Source of the DNA: Fonticula alba ATCC 38817
Taxonomy: Eukaryota > Protista > Nucleariida
Length of the DNA stretch: 7,029 nucleotides
NCBI GenBank assembly: GCA_000388065.2
Contig: KB932211.1
Reading direction: 5' to 3' (one strand)
Shown in pieces: positions 1 to 7,029 of the stretch. The notes under the pieces were generated by a model that saw only the letters and a program-made list of their open reading frames with translations, was not told where the DNA came from and searched no databases. Position 1 is the first letter of the stretch. Each line of letters starts with the position of its first letter. The position numbers were made by a program, and so were the translations under genes.

Positions 1-421
1 CGCCGTCGCCATGGTCGCCCTGCTGGCGGTCATCCACGAATTCTCCTCCTCGCGGGCCACGGCCGCCGGCTTCACCTTCGAGTACCACTACCGGTGCCGG
101 AAGGCCTTCGAGCGGGCCGACCTCTACAAGGTGTTCATCATCGCCATGGACCGGCTGCAGAAGCTCAGCCTCCTGGGTCCCGGGGCGTGCGTCGCCACGC
201 CGGAGCTCCAGTCGACCATGAGCAGCTCCCTTCACATCGCCGAGGCCATCCTCTCGTGGGACTTCTCGGTCATCAGCGCCGGCAGCATGCGCTTTGTTGT
301 GCGCAGCGAGGAGTCCGGCGAGGGCGCCCTGGCGCGTGACGCCAACGCCTCTTTCCAGCCGCCGGTCGAGTGGCAGGGGGTCCTGGCCGACCCGTCGGCC
401 TCGGTGGACCTCTTCTTCCGC
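1..421 (+). CDS. XPO4: XPO4 first visible exon (continues upstream of window)
   Basis: Frame open from base 2 (AVAMVALL...DLFFR); followed by donor GTGCGT at 422, phase 0. Intron 422..551 (130 nt). Confidence 0.9.
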
Positions 422-3400
422 GTGCGTGCTTGCGGAGTCTCCCGGCTGCCTGGCCCTCTTTCTTCCTTCTCCTCCCCAAGTGCATGGTGCTGATGCCGCT
501 CCGTCCGTGTCTCCCCGCCCCCCCCCCCCCCCTGCTGGCGATCGCGTGCAGCTTTACGCCATGACCCTCAGCTACGGCGATACCATCGGTCACTCGATCC
601 GCCAGTGCTTGATCCTGCTGGCCGGCCTGTCGGGGCCGGTGTTCACCAACTGCCCGGCCGACGCCCTGGCCACCTATGTCAACCGCTTCCTTCACAACAT
701 CATCCAAATCATCGACAAGTATGTGTCCCTCTCCGCCGCCGCCCCTCCACCCGTTGGACATATCCTGCGCACGCTTGCCGGCGCCCCGCCCCGGTCCACG
801 ACGCTAACACCATCGGCCGCCGCGACGAACCACCAACCGCCCCCCAACCGCACCGGCTGCGACAACACACAGCCTCCAGTACGCCTCCGAGACCGGCGCC
901 GAAGTCCTGGCCACCTCGCAGATGGCCCGCCGGCTGGTGATGGTCCATCCCATGCGGGACATCGCGCCGGTGCTGGAGCAGGGCGGCCTCCTGCCTCGCC
1001 TGGGCAAGTTCACGCTCGACTGCCTGGCACAGGTGTCCAGCGACGAGGTGGGCACCTGGTGCTCGGAGGCCCTGGACGAACTGCTGGCCATGTGGTCGAG
1101 CCTGCGTGCGTGCCCCTCCCCCTCCGGGGGCCCGGCCACGCTGGCGCCATCCCGGCCTGGCAAACCCTCTCTGCCCCCACTGACCGATGCTCCTCCTGGC
1201 TTTCTCGCTCCGTTCGCCCATGCGCTCGTCCTCCCCTCCTCCTGGTCCTCCCGTCCCGTGGCGGCGCCTTCCCCCTCCCGGTCGGGCCACTGCCCTCAGT
1301 GTCCAGCGCGCGGGACGCCTTCGAGCGGCAGCGCCTCACGGCTGGCAGCGGGGTGCAGCTCAGCGACACCCTGGTGTCCGCCCTGTCGGAGTCGGCGGCC
1401 ACCATCTTCCGGAGCTATGCCGAGCGCCATGTCAACCGGTCGCCGCAGGAGGCCGTCGAGGATGCGGACCCCTTCGAGGATGACCAGTCGATGTTCGAGT
1501 CGCAGCTGAAGGATGTGGCCTTCCTGGGCCGGTGCTCGGTGGACTCCTTCCGGCTGATGCACCAGCTGGCGGACACCTTCGCCGGGCAGCTGGCCGAGGC
1601 GGCGGCCACCCCCGGCGGGGCGGCCAGCCGGCCGGCCAGCTGGTGGGAGGGCCTCAATGAGGCGGTGCACTGGCTGTTCCTGCTGGCCACGCACCTGCTG
1701 GCCGACGTGGTCAAGGGCGAGCAGCCCCAGATCCCGGCCATGGTCATCCAGATCAGTGCCCGGGCCGCGGCCGAAGGGGCCACCCCGGAGGGGGACCCCA
1801 TCGTGCAGCTGGTCAATGCCCTGATCCGCCTGGCGGACCTGGCCGTCGCCGGGCCGGGCAGCCCGCTTGGGCCCTTCTGCAGTCCGCTGGTGTCGGACAC
1901 GGTCCTCTGGTTCTTCGAGCACTGGCTCCAGAGCTACCTCTACTACAACCCGCGGGACTATGGCAAGGTGATGAGGTGCGCACTGGCGTCGGCTCTTGCC
2001 AGTCTCCTTCTCCCTGCTTTTTTTCGTCTCTCCTTCATCTCGTGTCTCCTTCATCTCATGTCTCCTTCATCTCGTCTCTCCTTCATCTCGTCTCTCCTTC
2101 ATCTCGTCTCTCCTTCATCTCGTCTCTCCTTCATCTCGTGTCTCCTTCATCTCGTCTCTCCTCCATCTCGCCTCCCTTTCTCTTCATCCCTCCCTCTCTT
2201 CATTCCTCCCTCTCTTCATCACTCTCTCTCCTCACCTTGTCACCCTACTCTCCCACACACGTGGATCCCGCCGGCTGTCGGTGCATGGCAAATGATGACC
2301 CCCTGCTGCCCAATGGGCGGGCTATTTGGGTGCTCAGCCGGACGCTGGCCGACTCGTACAGTCGGAATTCCCCGGCCCCGGGGGCCGTGCTGGACTTCGT
2401 CCTGGGCAAGTGCCACGACGCCCTGCAGCTGTGGTTCTCCGAGGCGGACTCCGTCAACCAGGTGGCCGCGGTGTTCTTGGTGATTGCCGGCAACCGGGCC
2501 ATGCGCGAGAGCATCTTCGGGCTGCCCCGCTGGCAGGCCCTGTGGCCGCAGCTGATGCAGTCCATCGAGCGTCTGCCCTCCGACGCCCAGTCGCGCTTCA
2601 TCGAGTCCCTGTGCAACCTGAGCGTCGTGCACTACATGGACGCGCCGTATTACAAGGAGCTGCTGACGTTCACCGAGGTGCGTGGCGGCCGGCCCTCCAA
2701 GCGGGTGCCGGGGGCTGCCCTTTCCCCCCCCCCCCCTCCCCCCCCTTTTTCCGGCTGACCCTGGGAGCCTTGCCGCGCCACAGGCGCCCCTCCTCCCGCG
2801 ACCGCGCATTCCACCCGCCATGGCATTAACGCTCCCCCCCCCCCTTTCCCCTCGCCCGACACACAACAAACAACGGTGACGCACTCGCATGCGGCGCCCT
2901 GCCACCACCACCACCACCACCACTGCCACTGCTGCCCCCAACGGCTCAGGCTCGCCTCCACGACACCATGCGCAATCCGACGCACACCGGCCTGGCCCTC
3001 AGCACGCTGGACATCCTGCGCGGCGTGGCCATGTCCAAGAGCTCGGCCGACGGGCAATCGGTGTTCGCCCTGTGCTCCGGGCACTTCGGCAACCTGATCA
3101 CCCTGCTGACCGGGCAGCATGACATGCCGGGGATCGTGCAGCAGGTGCTCCTGGTGTTCGACGCCTTTGTCGAGCACCAGATCGCCTACCTGGAGGGGGA
3201 CCAGCTGCAGACCACCTGCCAGGCGCTGGTGGCCCTGCTGCGCGCCTTCGCCGAGATCCGCATGAAAACCCGCCGGAGCAATGCCCACGACGCGGATGAG
3301 GACCGGTCCTACGAGATCGTCACCCTGCTTCGGACGCTGGCCAACCTGCAGACGCGCGACTTCTCCGACTTTAGCACCGGTACGCCGGGCCGCGTGGCCC

Positions 3401-4463
3401 CCCCCCCCCTCCCCCTCTTCTCCCCGATGGCTTTGACGCTGACTCCGCCGGATTGGTCGTCTCCTTGGCCCCGGCCTGGGCCCGCCGCCAGGTGGCTCGG
3501 ACGCCACCAACGACCCGAACCACCTGTCCGTGTCGTCGGTCATCTACATCGGCCTGGAGCTGCTGCTGCCGCTCATCAGCGAGGCCATGCTCCAGTATCC
3601 CAACCTGTCGGAGCAGTTCTTCACCCTGGTTTCCTTCATGTTCGAGACGTACACCGACAAGCTGGTGTGCCTGTCGCCGGAGCTCTTCCGTGCGCTGATC
3701 GGCACCCTGGACTTCGGCCTGAAGTCGTGCGTTGCTGCCCCCCCCCCTCGCCCCCCTCGCTCCTGCTCGCTGCCTCGGCTGGGCCCCTGCCCCCTCTGCC
3801 CCGGGCCACATCTGCGCCCCTCCGGCACTCACCGGCCCATCCCCCGCGCTCTGTGCATGCGCACGCACAGCTTCGTTGATGAAAATGTCCGCCTCGCTCT
3901 GGCAGCCATCTACGGCATGGCCAGCTTCCTGTTCAATGCGCGGGAGGTGGCCCAGGCCAGTCCGGAGCACGGCCCAGAGGTCCAGGCCCAGCTGGCCCTG
4001 CTCGGGCCCATCGTGGACACTCTGCTGCTGGAGCAGCTCAATCGCCTGGTCTTCGGCAACCACGTCGGCTCGACTTCCCTGATGGAGAACGCCTCGGAGA
4101 CGCTCTTTGTGTCGATCTGCTCGCAGCAGGTGCGCTTCGCCCTCTTCCTCCCCCTGCCCCTGCCTTTGCTTTTTTTCCCCCCCTCGCGTGTGGCCCTGCC
4201 CTCGCCGCTGCCCTAACCCACGGCGCCTCCGCTGCCCACAACACCAACAGGCCTCCCTCAACCAGGTGTTCAGCCAGTTCGTGTCCCGGTACAACGACAA
4301 CCCCAAGATTCGGGACCGGCTGTCGGAGGAGCTCGTGCAGCTGGTCCGCGGCTCTGGCCCCCAGCCGCTGACCCTCATCCCCAACCGACTGAACACCACG
4401 GCCTTCCGCGCCAACCTCGAGGCCTTCCTCATCCACACGCGCGGCTTCCTGCGCGTGATGTAA
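1..4463 (+). CDS. XPO4: Exportin-4 (importin-beta/karyopherin family), 9 exons visible, 5'-partial: join(<1..421,552..718,873..1105,1300..1975,2338..2677,2950..3379,3492..3726,3871..4129,4251..4463)
   Basis: The spliced frame (2973 nt from base 2, 990 aa + TAA) is stop-free and all 8 intron phases match. Motifs match human XPO4 as recalled, in colinear order: HEFSSS..GFTFEYHYRCRKAFE (EFSSSS..GLSMEFHGNCKRVFQ), ILSWDF (VLSWNF), EDDQSMFESQLKDVAFLGR (EDDRDQFSDQLASVGMLGR), HWLFLLATHLLADVVKGEQPQIP (HWLILVTGYLLADDTQGETPLIP), LWFFEHWLQSYL (VWFLKRWAKTYL), LANLQTRDFSDFS (LTNLLSKEFIDFS), LLLPLISEAMLQYPNL (LILPLMSQDLLKFPTL). Roughly the first 170 aa lie upstream of the window, so ATG 11 is probably an internal Met. 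Confidence 0.93.
552..718 (+). CDS. XPO4: XPO4 exon 2 (visible numbering)
   Basis: Acceptor tgCAG at 551; LYAMTLSYGDTIGHSIRQCLILLAGLSGPVF; donor GTATGT at 719, phase 2. Intron 719..872 (154 nt), CTAAC at 804-808. Confidence 0.9.
873..1105 (+). CDS. XPO4: XPO4 exon 3
   Basis: Acceptor caCAG at 872 (phase 2, AA+C = Asn); ends EALDELLAMWSSL; donor GTGCGT at 1106, phase 1. Intron 1106..1299 (194 nt). Confidence 0.88.
1300..1975 (+). CDS. XPO4: XPO4 exon 4
   Basis: Acceptor ctCAG at 1299 (phase 1); contains the EDD..LGR and HWL..LLAD..GE.P.IP motifs; donor GTGCGC at 1976, phase 2. Intron 1976..2337 (362 nt). Confidence 0.9.
2025..2220 (+). repeat. 16-nt pyrimidine-rich minisatellite in XPO4 intron 4
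   Basis: Nine tandem copies of CGTCTCTCCTTCATCT (variants CGTGT-, CATGT-, -CTCCATCT) at 2025-2168, then about three copies of a related CCTCCCTCTCTTCATY unit at 2171-2220. Confidence 0.97.
2338..2677 (+). CDS. XPO4: XPO4 exon 5
   Basis: First AG after the repeat (ctCAG, 2337) is phase 2; RTLADSYSRNSPAPGAVLDFVLGKCHDALQLWFSE aligns with recalled human LPFSTAFGADTEGSQWIIGYLLQKVISNLSVWSSE; donor GTGCGT at 2678, phase 0. Intron 2678..2949 (272 nt). Confidence 0.87.
2903..2923 (+). repeat. (CAC)7 microsatellite in XPO4 intron 5
   Basis: Direct reading of caccaccaccaccaccaccac. Confidence 0.9.
2950..3379 (+). CDS. XPO4: XPO4 exon 6
   Basis: Acceptor ctCAG at 2949 (phase 0); ARLHDTMRN...TRDFSDFST; donor GTACGC at 3380, phase 1. 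Intron 3380..3491 (112 nt). Confidence 0.9.
3492..3726 (+). CDS. XPO4: XPO4 exon 7
   Basis: Acceptor gcCAG at 3491 (phase 1); SVIYIGLELLLPLISEAMLQYPNLSEQFF; donor GTGCGT at 3727, phase 2. Intron 3727..3870 (144 nt). Confidence 0.9.
3871..4129 (+). CDS. XPO4: XPO4 exon 8
   Basis: Acceptor caCAG at 3870 (phase 2); FVDENVRLALAAIY...ASETLFVSICSQQ; donor GTGCGC at 4130, phase 0. Intron 4130..4250 (121 nt), CTAAC at 4213-4217. Confidence 0.88.
4251..4463 (+). CDS. XPO4: XPO4 last exon
   Basis: Acceptor aaCAG at 4250 (phase 0); ends FRANLEAFLIHTRGFLRVM* (TAA 4461-4463), the same position as the recalled human C-terminus FLKSLEEFMANVGGLLCVK*. Confidence 0.92.
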   Translation, partial: ASLNQVFSQFVSRYNDNPKIRDRLSEELVQLVRGSGPQPLTLIPNRLNTTAFRANLEAFLIHTRGFLRVM

Positions 4464-4577: not shown

Positions 4578-4607
4578 GAATATAGATCTTCCTCTTTTTC
4601 TTACTTG
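4578..4607. terminator. Candidate bidirectional 3'-end/polyadenylation region (AT-rich island)
   Basis: The most AT-rich patch between the convergent stop codons; AATATA on + (4579-4584) and AAGAAA on - (4602-4597) are variant hexamers; no canonical AATAAA. Confidence 0.3.
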
Positions 4608-4685
4608 GCTGGCAGGGCGACCTCGCGTGCTGGGCATGGCCGCACACGCCAGACGGCGGCGGGGGAGGGGCATCGAGAGGGCACA

Positions 4686-4718
<33 letters not shown>
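4686..4718 (+). repeat. Poly-G homopolymer (G33) between the two stop codons
   Basis: 33 consecutive G by count; exact length may be assembly-dependent. Confidence 0.95.
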
Positions 4719-4719
<1 letters not shown>

Positions 4720-4824
4720 AGTGCGCGCGCGACTGTGCCATGGCCGGAGAATCCAAGCCGGGGCACGATCAGGCAAGGGGCTCCGCCCTCCCCCTCCCCT
4801 CATGCCCCCTCTTCCGCGCCTCTC

Positions 4825-5154
4825 CTACAGCCGGGCCTTCATCCGGCGCTGGCCGGTCTCACGGAAGTGCTCGACCTCGGCAGTGGCCGACTCCAAGCCG
4901 GTCTGCTGGATCATGCTGGCCGCGGCCAAGAGGTTGTGGAATGTCCCGCGAGCCACCCGGTTGTAGGCCACCTGGTCGTGGATGCGCAATTGGCGCGCCT
5001 GGCGCACGTAGTCGCTGGTCTCGTCGAACCCCAGGCCGGCCGGGTACTTGCTGACAAACAGGGCCGTGGCCACGCTGTAGATGAGGAGCCCCGGGGCGGC
5101 TGGCGAGCCGGGCTCCGCAAAGTAGTCCTCCACGCCGGGCGGGTCGTTGGTGAA
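4825..5154 (-). CDS. Thioesterase last exon (last beta-strand plus ~74-aa tail ending RRMKARL*)
   Basis: Acceptor ccCAG at 5155 (phase 0); YSVATALFVS matches the final hotdog strand; TAG at 4827-4825. Confidence 0.88.
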   Translation of the reverse strand, partial: FTNDPPGVEDYFAEPGSPAAPGLLIYSVATALFVSKYPAGLGFDETSDYVRQARQLRIHDQVAYNRVARGTFHNLLAAASMIQQTGLESATAEVEHFRETGQRRMKARL

Positions 5155-6255
5155 CTGGGAAGCGGTGCATGGAGCCCAGAGGGAGCGGGGGGGCGAGGAG
5201 GGGGATGGAGGGGGGGGGGAGGAGGGTGAACGCGGGGGTGAAGGCGCCAAGGCGGGGCCCGGGCGAGAGCCATAGTCAGAAAAGAGCGGCGCCATGCACG
5301 AAAGAGGGCGAGGGAGGGGCAGAAGGGCATTCAGGCCCCGGGGGAGGGGGCCAGGGCATGGCACGGACCCGGCTCTCGATGAACAGCTTGTTGCCGACCT
5401 TGCGGATGATGCGCGCCGAAATGACCACCGTGTGCTCCAGCGGCACGGACCGCCGGTAGTCGATGGACAGGCGCGCCGTCACATAGCCCACCCCGTAGTT
5501 CCGGAAGATCATCGAACCGCAGGTGGCATCGTGAAGGAGGGCAATGGCCCCGCCTGGGCGCGGCGGAGCACGGCACCCCCGGAATCACACAGCCAAGTGG
5601 CGGGGTGTCAGGTGCCCATGGCGCGGGGGACGGAAGGCCAGGAGGATGGGCCGGAAAACGGCCAACGGGCCATGGGCCCGCCGCCTGGGGGGTCGGCCGG
5701 GGGTGGAGACAGAGAAGGAGAGGGAAGGGACGCACCATGCACACAGCCGGTGGGCCCCTCGCACAGGCGCGAGAACCAGCACACCGTGTGCAGCGGCCCG
5801 GTGTCGGTGATGTCCTCCGACGTCTGGCCCTCGGCCAGGGGCTCCAGCTGGACGCTCATCTCCCGGTTCCGAGCCGACTCACATCGCTGGGCGTACTGGG
5901 TGTCGAAGAATTTGGAGAAGGAAAAGCGCTCCTGATCCAGGAAGGTCGTGGCCCCGAGGACGATGGCCTGCCGCTCCAGGTAATACTCCTCCGGCAGGGC
6001 CAGCCCAGGGACCGTGCGCGCGCGGGTTTGCTCCAGGTCCGCTCGCTCGGCCACGGCGCCCTGTGCACACATGCGCCGGCCGCCCGAGAGCGGGACCCGG
6101 GAAAAGGGAGGCGAGGGACGACAAGTCAGGGGCCGGGGGCCAGCAGAAGGCACACATGGAGACTGATGTGCACAGATGTACGGGCGGAGCCACAAATGCC
6201 GAGGCAGCAGCAGCAGCAGCAGCAACAACAACAACGGCAACAACGGCAGCAACAA

Positions 6256-6289
<34 letters not shown>

Positions 6290-6303
6290 AGCAACAACGG
6301 CAA

Positions 6304-6338
<35 letters not shown>

Positions 6339-6969
6339 GCGACAATAGCAACAATGAAACTAGAAAGACCCAGACACATACCATCTCGGCCACCTCGCGC
6401 GCGTACGGCTGGAAACGGAAGGAGGACAGCGGAACAAAGCGCCACTCCCGGGCCGCCGGCGTGGCCAGCGGGTCCGGAGAGGACGACGCTCGCAAGCAGG
6501 ATGCCCGATGCCCGACAACCAGCGGGTCGGGGCAGCAGCCGGTCCCCCAGGCAGCCGGCTCGGTTTGGAGCTCCTGCTGGCGGAAGCGATGCAGCGCCGG
6601 GGACAGGGCCATGGCGGACCGCGCGCGCAGGAGATTCCCCCGGGCGATGGCGCCCAGGCGCTGGTCCAGGTCGGCCGGCTCGCTACTTGAGGCAGACCCC
6701 TGGGGCATGGGGGCCCCGGCCTCCGGGTCCTCGGGCCGGGGGAAGCCGCCGTAAAAGTGCATCGGCGCCCCCGGCAGCGGGGTGGTCAGGAGGGACCCGC
6801 GCGCGGCGCGTGCCTCCGCCATGGCCCGCGGAGAGGGCCGCGCGAAGGCCGGCAGCTCCGCGCCATACAGCAATCCCGCGCTGTAGGTGTCGTACCCGGC
6901 CGGCGAGGGGGTATCCGGGAAGACTGTGGGCTTTGGCGCCTGCCCCGGGCGCGAGGACTGGCCAGACAT
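4825..6969 (-). CDS. THEM4/THEM5-like hotdog-fold (PaaI/4HBT superfamily) acyl-CoA thioesterase with long N- and C-terminal extensions and C-terminal -ARL: complement(join(4825..5154,5369..5553,5736..6060,6382..6969))
   Basis: Splicing rebuilds EGPTGCVHG|GAIALLHDATCG...VTARLSIDYRRSVPLEHTVVISARIIRKVGNKLFIESR|F...YSVATALFVS. This is close to recalled human THEM4 [21 protein letters not shown]...[37 protein letters not shown]...YSEATSLFIK. The HGG, Asp and Thr active-site residues are present. 1428 nt = 475 aa + TAG. The start is uncertain: ATG 6969 is the first ATG, but the frame is open to the window edge. Orthology to THEM4 is not established, so no symbol is given. Confidence 0.85.
5369..5553 (-). 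CDS. Thioesterase exon 3 (catalytic core)
   Basis: Acceptor ccCAG at 5554 (phase 1) completes the HGG motif; GAIALLHDATCG...KLFIESR; donor GTCCGT at 5368, phase 0. Intron 5155..5368 (214 nt). Confidence 0.9.
5736..6060 (-). CDS. Thioesterase exon 2
   Basis: Acceptor caCAG at 6061 (phase 0), CTGAC 65 nt upstream; ends CEGPTGCVH-G; donor GTGCGT at 5735, phase 1. Intron 5554..5735 (182 nt). Confidence 0.85.
6205..6354 (+). repeat. Compound trinucleotide repeat (CAG/CAA/CGG) inside thioesterase intron 1
   Basis: 47 consecutive CRR triplets at 6205-6345: (CAG)6, (CAA)n blocks, six CAACAACGG units, and an exact tandem 27-mer duplication (6220-6246 = 6247-6273). Confidence 0.97.
6382..6969 (-). 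CDS. Thioesterase exon 1 (N-terminal extension; 5' boundary uncertain)
   Basis: Stop-free MSGQSSRP...AREVAEM; donor GTATGT at 6381, phase 0. No homology recognised. The C-rich sequence upstream of a CAG at 6960-6958 could instead be an intron end. Confidence 0.62.
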
Positions 6970-7029
6970 GGGCGAGGGGAGGGGGAGCGGGAGGCGTGGC
7001 CGCGTGCGGGACGTGCGCAAGACCGGGGG

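What the first reader, a model, noticed from the sequence alone, without database searches (positions are those of the whole stretch)
4825..4848. THEM4-like thioesterase ends in a PTS1-type peroxisomal signal (RRMK-ARL*)
Seen: the last codons on - read R-R-M-K-A-R-L-TAG. Established: PTS1 is (S/A/C)(K/R/H)(L/M) at the extreme C-terminus, ARL is a canonical variant, and upstream basic residues favour Pex5 binding. Mammalian THEM4/THEM5 are mitochondrial, while familiar peroxisomal thioesterases are other types (ACOT8/Tes1, type-I ACOTs, plant DHNAT). Inference: a THEM4-type enzyme retargeted to a peroxisome or glycosome through an added tail. If the host is an anaerobic protist thought to lack peroxisomes, this would hint at a cryptic anaerobic peroxisome like those known in Archamoebae. 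A single tripeptide can arise by chance.
Basis: partly seen in the sequence, partly recalled or inferred. Interest (0 to 1): 0.7.

Follow-up and report, generated by a model that had tools for sequence, protein, structure and literature searches.

The report
Fonticula THEM4-like thioesterase with peroxisomal tail
The amoeba Fonticula alba has an expressed fat-metabolism enzyme (a THEM4-type acyl-CoA thioesterase) that really does end in a peroxisome address tag, but many protist relatives carry the same tag and the host is an ordinary oxygen-breathing cell with peroxisome genes, so this is a routine annotation point.

Summary
The minus-strand codons 4848..4825 read R-R-M-K-A-R-L-stop. They close a four-exon gene (6969..4825) that is identical to the public 475-aa model H696_05464 of Fonticula alba. 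Spliced RNA contigs from four runs use exactly these introns and this last exon.

The protein is a single hotdog (Pfam 4HBT) thioesterase. Its nearest solved relatives, by sequence and by fold, are human THEM4 and THEM5. The HGG motif and the Asp/Thr pair that align with THEM4 D161/T177 are kept.

The PTS1 reading is supported by conservation:
- 30 of 149 homolog cluster representatives end in [SAC][KRH][LM], against 0.3% expected.
- These include THEM4-like proteins of Balamuthia (-ARL), Stygamoeba (-ARL), Stenamoeba (-AKL) and Naegleria (-SKL).
- Only 1 of 109 further word-search hits, mostly vertebrate THEM4, does so.

The tail is therefore not a Fonticula invention. The "anaerobic protist with a cryptic peroxisome" idea does not apply. 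Fonticula is an aerobic relative of fungi, and a published table lists hits for PEX2/10/11/13/16/19, acyl-CoA oxidase and catalase.

One point stays open. That table shows no PEX5 hit, and earlier scan notes describe an unusual PEX5. I could not fetch it to check.

Verdict: new member of a known kind, low interest.

The parts
6382..6969 (-). Exon 1, ATG at 6969-6967. It encodes residues 1-196, an Ala/Pro/Ser-rich N-terminal extension with no recognisable domain.
   Evidence: Identical to residues 1-196 of P0002. The RNA contigs cover it and join 6381/6059. Pfam, NCBIfam and Atlas searches gave nothing usable. Composition.
6061..6381 (-). Intron 1 (GT..AG), 321 nt, with no in-frame stop. It holds an imperfect trinucleotide repeat at about 6193-6347.
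   Evidence: Joint 6059/6381 with CT..AC ends on the + strand in all four runs. The read-through ORF 5608..7020 is.
5736..6060 (-). Exon 2, residues 197-304 plus the first base of Gly305. It holds the THEM4-type N-terminal strand and helix and the start of the hotdog core, up to the His of the HGG motif (His304 = 5739-5737).
   Evidence: AlphaFold strand 46-52 and helix 54-68 of the 197-475 piece have pLDDT 80-86.
5554..5735 (-). Intron 2 (GT..AG). It is retained in the public 'variant' model of 346 aa.
   Evidence: Joint 5552/5735 (cut +1) in all four runs. P0001 reads into it.
5369..5553 (-). Exon 3, residues 305-366: the hotdog central helix and strands, with Asp313 (5530-5528) and Thr330 (5479-5477).
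   Evidence: Pfam 4HBT E 1e-6 on this exon alone. THEM4 4gah/4ae8 E 5e-5. D and T are invariant in alignment A1. Positions checked.
5155..5368 (-). Intron 3 (GT..AG).
   Evidence: Joint 5154/5369 in all four runs.
4825..5154 (-). Exon 4 coding part, residues 367-475 plus the TAG stop (4827-4825): the last hotdog strands, then a helical C-terminal extension of about 70 residues.
   Evidence: hhalign with the PTS1-bearing family reaches residue 415. Helices 213-271 of the modelled piece have pLDDT 54-73.
4828..4848 (-). The flagged tail R-R-M-K-A-R-L. The PTS1 tripeptide ARL is 4836-4828. Basic residues sit at positions -4, -6 and -7.
   Evidence: The last five residues have pLDDT below 50 in the model, that is, no fixed structure.
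4733..4824 (-). 3' untranslated region, at least this far. The contigs break at the poly-C run 4674-4732 and a further piece lies at 4581-4673.
   Evidence: table 8.

Best explanation
The minus-strand gene (H696_05464 of Fonticula alba) encodes a THEM4-family single-hotdog acyl-CoA thioesterase. Its flexible, basic C-terminus ending in -ARL is a type-1 peroxisomal targeting signal. The most likely mechanism is as follows. The folded enzyme, probably an oligomer as in other hotdog thioesterases, is bound at its free C-terminus by the PTS1 receptor PEX5 and carried into the peroxisome matrix. There it hydrolyses acyl-CoA esters to free fatty acid and CoA, which regulates the CoA and acyl-CoA pools of peroxisomal beta-oxidation. 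Shown here: the gene structure, its expression, the family assignment, the conserved catalytic motif, the canonical tripeptide, and its strong enrichment among homologs. Inferred: import, enzyme activity, and the role in beta-oxidation. The PTS1 tail is a shared trait of many protist THEM4-like proteins, not a Fonticula novelty.
For: Host and model: exon 2 matches the Fonticula alba protein at 100% identity, and the cluster holds the 475-aa H696_05464, equal to my exon model. Expression and splicing: one spliced contig per run in four runs, with three GT..AG joints at the predicted sites and coverage through the stop. Family: Pfam 4HBT 40.2 bits against a cut-off of 20.6; PDB sequence best THEM4 at E 4e-10, then THEM5; Foldseek best THEM4 at E 1.7e-10, then THEM5. 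H304-G-G, D313 and T330 are invariant with homologs and align to THEM4. PTS1: canonical ARL, with 5 basic and 1 acidic residue in the last 12 and an unstructured tail in the model. Conservation: 30/149 canonical and 14 near-canonical ends among homolog representatives, against 0.33% expected, and 23 of the top 50. Named examples are Balamuthia 'THEM4' -ARL, Stygamoeba -ARL, Stenamoeba -AKL and Naegleria lovaniensis -SKL. The Balamuthia protein matches THEM4 at E 7e-25. The profile of these PTS1 proteins matches P0002 at 99.6% probability, E 7e-24. Grouping Fonticula with the PTS1-rich clade is not rejected (AU p 0.71). Host machinery: Table S4 of PMC6299283 gives Fonticula hits for PEX2, PEX10, PEX11, PEX13, PEX16, PEX19, PXMP2/4, acyl-CoA oxidase (2) and catalase (1), while microsporidia score 0 for the peroxin rows and acyl-CoA oxidase.
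Against: No localisation or import data exist. The same published table shows 0 hits for the PEX5, PEX12, PEX14 and PEX3 models in Fonticula; some of those models also miss fungi or amoebae. Earlier scan notes, which I did not test, describe a Fonticula PEX5 with most PTS1-pocket residues replaced. The C-terminal extension beyond residue 415 is not detectably homologous to that of the other PTS1-bearing proteins. Fonticula sits on a long, unplaced branch, so an independent gain or a chance match cannot be excluded. The N-terminal extension of about 280 residues is unexplained and could impose another location.
Confidence: 0.72

Rival explanations
1. The ARL end is a chance tripeptide in an Ala/Arg/Leu-rich proteome, and the enzyme is cytosolic or works elsewhere.
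For: About 0.3% of proteins of this composition end canonically by chance. The distal part of the C-terminal extension has no detectable homology to the PTS1-bearing relatives. The tree does not place Fonticula firmly.
Against: The family-specific prior is high: 20% of all listed homologs and 46% of the top 50 have canonical or near-canonical ends. The upstream residues are basic, as in those homologs. The extension starts at the same place with a similar P-x-[YF]-[DE] motif.
Confidence: 0.1
2. The tail is an inherited PTS1 that works poorly or by altered rules in Fonticula because the receptor PEX5 has a changed binding pocket. The enzyme would then be mostly cytosolic, or imported by piggy-backing or another route.
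For: Earlier scan notes s1-065495 and s1-065456 report an unusual PEX5 with four of five pocket residues replaced (untested here). The published PEX5 model finds 0 hits in Fonticula but 2 in its sister nucleariid Parvularia.
Against: A fully canonical, basic PTS1 has been kept on a very divergent protein (best identity 39% over 84 alignment columns), which suggests continued selection. Other peroxins and matrix enzymes are present. I could not inspect PEX5 myself.
Confidence: 0.12
3. Dual or conditional location: the unexplained N-terminal region of about 280 residues, or alternative isoforms, send part of the protein elsewhere. One such isoform is the intron-2-retaining variant, which lacks the catalytic core and the tail.
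For: The long N-terminal extension has no match. A public variant model of 346 aa lacks the PTS1. Vertebrate THEM4 proteins have presequence-like N-termini and no PTS1 and are reported as mitochondrial (PMC13599495).
Against: The first 40 residues hold 7 Pro, 3 acidic and only 2 basic residues, unlike a mitochondrial presequence (a crude check). Only the fully spliced form appears in the RNA contigs.
Confidence: 0.06

Closest known systems
Human THEM4 (CTMP) and THEM5, single-hotdog type II acyl-CoA thioesterases
   Same: Best solved relatives by sequence (E 4e-10 and 5e-5) and by fold. Same HGG motif and the Asp/Thr pair aligned to THEM4 D161/T177. Same Pfam family 4HBT.
   Different: The human enzymes are reported as mitochondrial (PMC13599495). 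Vertebrate THEM4 hits have presequence-like N-termini and no C-terminal extension, and only 1 of 109 further word-search hits (mostly vertebrate THEM4) ends in a canonical tripeptide. The Fonticula protein has an extra ~280-residue N-terminal region and a ~70-residue C-terminal extension ending in ARL.
Protist THEM4-like proteins with PTS1 (Balamuthia mandrillaris KAL6062035.1, Stygamoeba, Stenamoeba, Naegleria lovaniensis, many environmental sequences)
   Same: Hotdog core (hhalign 99.6%). A C-terminal extension that starts at the same point, a basic stretch, and a terminal [SA][KR]L; Balamuthia and Stygamoeba even share -ARL.
   Different: They are 200-260 aa long, with a conserved 'DFPIL' N-terminal segment and an 'LFG..SG.TKE' tail motif that Fonticula lacks or has diverged beyond recognition. 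None has been localised experimentally, as far as the library searches show.
Plant peroxisomal hotdog thioesterases DHNAT1/2
   Same: 4HBT-type hotdog thioesterases that carry PTS1 and are localised to peroxisomes (PMC9244630). Same working logic.
   Different: Only a distant fold match (AtDHNAT1 4k02 at rank 36). Dedicated to phylloquinone synthesis and said to be of bacterial origin. Not the same subfamily.
ACOT8 / yeast Tes1 peroxisomal acyl-CoA thioesterases
   Same: The presumed role, hydrolysis of acyl-CoA in the peroxisome matrix, and PTS1-dependent import (own knowledge; ACOT8 is listed as peroxisomal in PMC13599495).
   Different: ACOT8 is listed among the ACOTs with two hotdog domains (PMC13599495). 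The Fonticula protein has one 4HBT domain.

Membership tests
THEM4/THEM5-type 4HBT hotdog acyl-CoA thioesterase | Pfam PF03061 (4HBT) domain above the gathering score | tested here: met
   40.2 bits against a cut-off of 20.6, residues 301-373. Exon 3 alone scores 29.5 bits.
THEM4/THEM5-type 4HBT hotdog acyl-CoA thioesterase | THEM4/5 are the nearest characterised relatives by sequence and by fold | tested here: met
   PDB phmmer: THEM4 E 4e-10, THEM5 4.8e-5. Foldseek: THEM4 chains at ranks 1-6, THEM5 at rank 7. The profile of the close PTS1-bearing relatives hits vertebrate THEM4 at about 1e-30.
THEM4/THEM5-type 4HBT hotdog acyl-CoA thioesterase | HGG motif and the catalytic Asp and Thr (human D161, T177; the catalytic role is from my own knowledge of the THEM4 literature) | tested here: met
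   H304-G305-G306, D313 and T330 align to the THEM4 residues and are invariant in alignment A1. Positions checked.
THEM4/THEM5-type 4HBT hotdog acyl-CoA thioesterase | Acyl-CoA thioesterase activity | not testable with these tools
   Needs an enzyme assay.
THEM4/THEM5-type 4HBT hotdog acyl-CoA thioesterase | N-terminal mitochondrial presequence, as in vertebrate members | tested here: inconclusive
   The first 40 residues are Pro-rich with 3 acidic and 2 basic residues, unlike the basic N-termini of the fish and reptile THEM4 hits. No targeting predictor was available.
PTS1 cargo of PEX5 | [SAC][KRH][LM] at the extreme C-terminus of the translated, expressed last exon | tested here: met
   ARL followed by TAG. 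The last exon and stop are covered by spliced RNA contigs in four runs.
PTS1 cargo of PEX5 | Favourable upstream context (basic, accessible, unstructured) | tested here: met
   K at -4, R at -6 and -7; 5 basic and 1 acidic residue in the last 12. The last 5 residues have pLDDT below 50, after helices of low-to-moderate confidence (pLDDT 54-73).
PTS1 cargo of PEX5 | Signal conserved in homologs | tested here: met
   30/149 canonical plus 14 near-canonical ends against 0.33% expected. The label is clustered on the tree: 14 changes against 27 in shuffles, 0 of 500 as low. Named protist examples.
PTS1 cargo of PEX5 | Host has peroxisomes and a PTS1 receptor | tested here: inconclusive
   The published table (PMC6299283, Table S4) gives Fonticula hits for PEX2/10/11/13/16/19, PXMP2/4, acyl-CoA oxidase and catalase, but 0 for PEX5/12/14/3. 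Earlier scan notes report a divergent PEX5. I could not fetch it.
PTS1 cargo of PEX5 | Demonstrated PEX5-dependent import | not testable with these tools
   Needs a reporter-fusion or binding experiment.
ACOT8/Tes1 double-hotdog peroxisomal thioesterases | Two tandem hotdog domains | tested here: not met
   One 4HBT domain only. Some long homologs do have two, but P0002 does not.
Plant DHNAT-type peroxisomal thioesterases | Closest relationship to DHNAT1/2 | tested here: not met
   AtDHNAT1 is only rank 36 by fold and is absent from the sequence hits at E 0.1 or better.

The most novel reading that the evidence does not exclude
The THEM4 family was peroxisomal in early eukaryotes. A C-terminal extension ending in PTS1 is found in Amoebozoa, Heterolobosea, Fonticula and many environmental protists. 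The vertebrate THEM4/THEM5 (CTMP) enzymes, reported as mitochondrial, would then be the derived state, having lost the tail and gained a presequence. Fonticula would be the holomycotan witness of the old state. A sharper variant: it keeps a canonical PTS1 although its PEX5 pocket is reported as altered, which would mean altered signal reading.
Probability: 0.4. Interest if true: 0.35.

Novelty: new member of a known kind. Interest (0 to 1): 0.25.

Why it matters
It adds a likely matrix enzyme to the poorly described peroxisome of Fonticula alba, a key outgroup of fungi. It also shows that PTS1-tailed THEM4-like thioesterases are common in protists. That corrects the impression from mammals that this family is mitochondrial, and it offers a handy natural PTS1 cargo for testing the reportedly unusual Fonticula PEX5. 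It does not reveal a new organelle or a new targeting principle.

Tried and rejected
- My first guess from the 68% G+C content and pyrimidine-rich introns was a green alga. The 100% match to Fonticula alba rejected it.
- Exon 2 alone found nothing in Pfam, NCBIfam or the PDB.
- The N-terminal 200 residues gave no usable Atlas match.
- The word-based search with residues 197-475 found only three weak relatives, so the exhaustive search was justified.
- Literature: no paper in the library pairs Fonticula with PEX or peroxin terms. The supplements of the peroxisome-loss paper and the PEX comparative paper do not list Fonticula. THEM4 plus PTS1 gave no relevant paper. The free-living-amoeba peroxisome paper does not mention thioesterases.
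- The tree could not place the Fonticula protein (113 columns, long branch). Only the AU test showed that the PTS1-rich clade is compatible with it, and that group was named after the tree had been seen.
- I could not obtain any PEX5 sequence by reference, so the receptor pocket was not examined.
Exons were searched one by one by reference. The full-length protein used later (P0002) is the public record returned, and it equals the exon model.

Full report
**Observation.** On the minus strand the window reads ...E-T-G-Q-R-R-M-K-A-R-L followed by TAG at 4827-4825.

**Gene model.**
- I read four exons on the minus strand: 6969..6382, 6060..5736, 5553..5369 and 5154..4825. All three introns have GT..AG ends.
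- Exon 2, scored inside the read-through ORF, matched a Fonticula alba protein at 100% identity.
- The same 90% cluster holds the public 475-aa protein H696_05464 (KCV67997.1 / XP_009497564.1, named 'Acyl-coenzyme A thioesterase THEM4' by UniRef). This is P0002, and it equals the four-exon model residue for residue. P0002 was used for the later searches.

**Host.** The host is Fonticula alba, as earlier follow-ups in this scan also stated. It is not an anaerobic protist.

**Expression.**
- Four runs of one organism (two samples, one study) each hold one spliced contig of about 1.6 kb.
- Each contig covers 4733..7029 and beyond, with joints at 5154/5369, 5552/5735 and 6059/6381. No letters differ from the window.
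- The last exon and its stop codon are therefore transcribed as modelled, and no alternative last exon was seen.
- These are contigs, so rare isoforms cannot be excluded.
- The refuting condition 'transcripts show a different last exon' is not met.

**What the protein is.**
- Pfam 4HBT (PF03061) scores 40.2 bits against a cut-off of 20.6, at residues 301-373.
- The best solved sequences are human THEM4 (E 4e-10) and THEM5 (E 4.8e-5).
- An AlphaFold model of residues 197-475, built on 104 aligned sequences, has mean pLDDT 74, with the hotdog core above 90.
- Its best Foldseek matches are again THEM4 (E 1.7e-10) and then THEM5. Arabidopsis DHNAT1 is only at rank 36.
- H304-G-G, D313 and T330 align with the THEM4 HGG motif, D161 and T177. 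That these THEM4 residues are catalytic comes from my own knowledge. They are invariant among 20 aligned homologs.
- 'THEM4-like thioesterase' is therefore right.
- Residues 1-196 are Ala/Pro/Ser-rich with no match anywhere.

**Is the tail a PTS1?**
- The tripeptide is canonical. The last 12 residues hold five basic and one acidic residue, and the last five are unstructured in the model.
- Chance alone gives such an end in about 0.3% of proteins, so the test that counts is conservation.
- The exhaustive search with residues 197-475 found 552 relatives.
- Of the 149 listed cluster representatives other than the Fonticula proteins, 30 end in [SAC][KRH][LM] and 14 more in near-canonical forms such as PKL, GKL, ANL, SNL and SKI. 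That is 20% against 0.33% expected, binomial p about 1e-43. In the top 50 the share is 46%.
- Named examples are Balamuthia mandrillaris 'Thioesterase superfamily member 4' (-ARL), Stygamoeba regulata (-ARL), Stenamoeba stenopodia (-AKL) and Naegleria lovaniensis (-SKL).
- The Balamuthia protein matches human THEM4 at E 7e-25 over nearly its whole length.
- A profile of 14 such proteins hits vertebrate THEM4 at about 1e-30. These are therefore THEM4-family proteins, not another hotdog clade.
- They share a C-terminal extension after the last strand (P-x-Y-E, 'LFG..SG.TKE', a Lys/Arg-rich run), and most of them end in [SA][KR]L.
- The profile matches the Fonticula protein with 99.6% probability (E 7e-24), from the hotdog core into the first residues of its own extension, where a similar P-x-x-x-G-F-D-E motif sits. 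The rest of the Fonticula extension is not recognisably alike.
- Only 1 of the 109 further word-search hits, mostly vertebrate THEM4, ends canonically. The examples read have basic presequence-like N-termini and stop soon after the core. This fits the mitochondrial location reported for mammals (PMC13599495).

**Phylogeny.**
- A quick maximum-likelihood tree on 113 core columns shows a clade of 24 proteins (SH-aLRT 90), of which 20 have canonical or near-canonical ends.
- The PTS1 label is clustered: 14 changes against 27 in shuffles, with 0 of 500 shuffles as low.
- The Fonticula protein sits on a long, unplaced branch.
- Forcing it into the PTS1-rich clade is not rejected and even gave a better likelihood than the free quick search (AU p 0.71). 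The group was named after seeing the tree, so this shows compatibility only.
- Whether Fonticula inherited the tail or gained it anew is therefore not settled. With no root, the direction of change between the PTS1 forms and the presequence forms is not settled either.

**Does the host have the machinery?** I could not fetch any peroxin sequence by reference, so I relied on a published table and say so. In Supplementary Table 4 of Torruella et al. 2018 (PMC6299283), the Fonticula column shows:
- hits for PEX2 (1), PEX10 (2), PEX11 (1), PEX13 (2), PEX16 (1), PEX19 (1), PXMP2 (1) and PXMP4 (1);
- hits for acyl-CoA oxidase (2), catalase (1), carnitine acetyltransferase (4) and D-amino-acid oxidase (1);
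- zeros in the microsporidian columns for the peroxin rows and acyl-CoA oxidase.

This argues for an ordinary oxidative peroxisome with beta-oxidation, the setting in which a matrix thioesterase makes sense.

The same table has 0 hits in Fonticula for the PEX5, PEX12, PEX14 and PEX3 models. Its sister Parvularia has 2 PEX5 hits. The PEX3 and PEX14 models also miss many fungi or amoebae, so those zeros are weak. Two earlier notes of this scan (s1-065495, s1-065456) report a Fonticula PEX5 that is unusual, with four of five PTS1-pocket residues replaced. I did not test this. It is the main reason my confidence is not higher, and it is the one place where something of real interest could hide.

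**Comparison with what is known.**
- The protein works like other peroxisomal acyl-CoA thioesterases, namely ACOT8/Tes1 and plant DHNAT (the latter in PMC9244630).
- By membership it belongs to the THEM4/THEM5 branch of the 4HBT hotdog family.
- Within that branch, it belongs to a widespread but, as far as my library searches show, undescribed set of protist proteins with PTS1 tails.

**Verdict.** This is a real, expressed gene with a very probable PTS1, and a new member of a known kind. Interest is low, with a modest evolutionary side point (THEM4 may have been peroxisomal first) and one open link to the PEX5 oddity.

Noticed in passing
window 1-4463, + strand: A multi-exon gene converges on the thioesterase gene.
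   Followed up: partly
window 4581-4592: Contigs that continue the + strand gene reach 4592, while a piece that may continue the thioesterase 3' UTR lies at 4581-4673. The two convergent transcripts may therefore abut or overlap by about 12 bases. Contigs cannot show strand or ends.
   Followed up: no
window 4674-4732: A long homopolymer run (poly-C on the minus strand) sits in the thioesterase 3' UTR. It breaks every RNA contig, and read laying skipped it as a repeat.
   Followed up: no
window 6061-6381 (intron 1), repeat about 6193-6347: Intron 1 is 321 nt, a multiple of three, and has no in-frame stop. It is filled with an imperfect GTT/GCT/GCC trinucleotide repeat that would read as poly-Leu. 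Exon 1, intron 1 and exon 2 thus form one 470-aa ORF (5608..7020). The intron is spliced out in all four RNA contig sets.
   Followed up: partly
window 5608-5735 (intron 2): The public 'variant' model KCV67998.1 (346 aa, P0001) retains intron 2 and stops inside it. It therefore lacks Gly305 onward, including D313, T330 and the PTS1. This form was not seen in the RNA contigs.
   Followed up: partly
homologs P0006, P0007, P0008, P0012, P0014, P0018, P0021, P0026: The top-scoring relatives of 350-550 aa are tandem double-hotdog proteins from unnamed eukaryotic or metagenomic sources. Several also end in AKL, SKL, GKL or SKI.
   Followed up: partly
PMC6299283, Supplementary Table 4, Fon_al column: The published PEX5 (K13342) model finds no hit in Fonticula but two in the sister nucleariid Parvularia. 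PEX2/10/11/13/16/19 are found. This echoes the earlier scan notes of a divergent Fonticula PEX5.
   Followed up: partly
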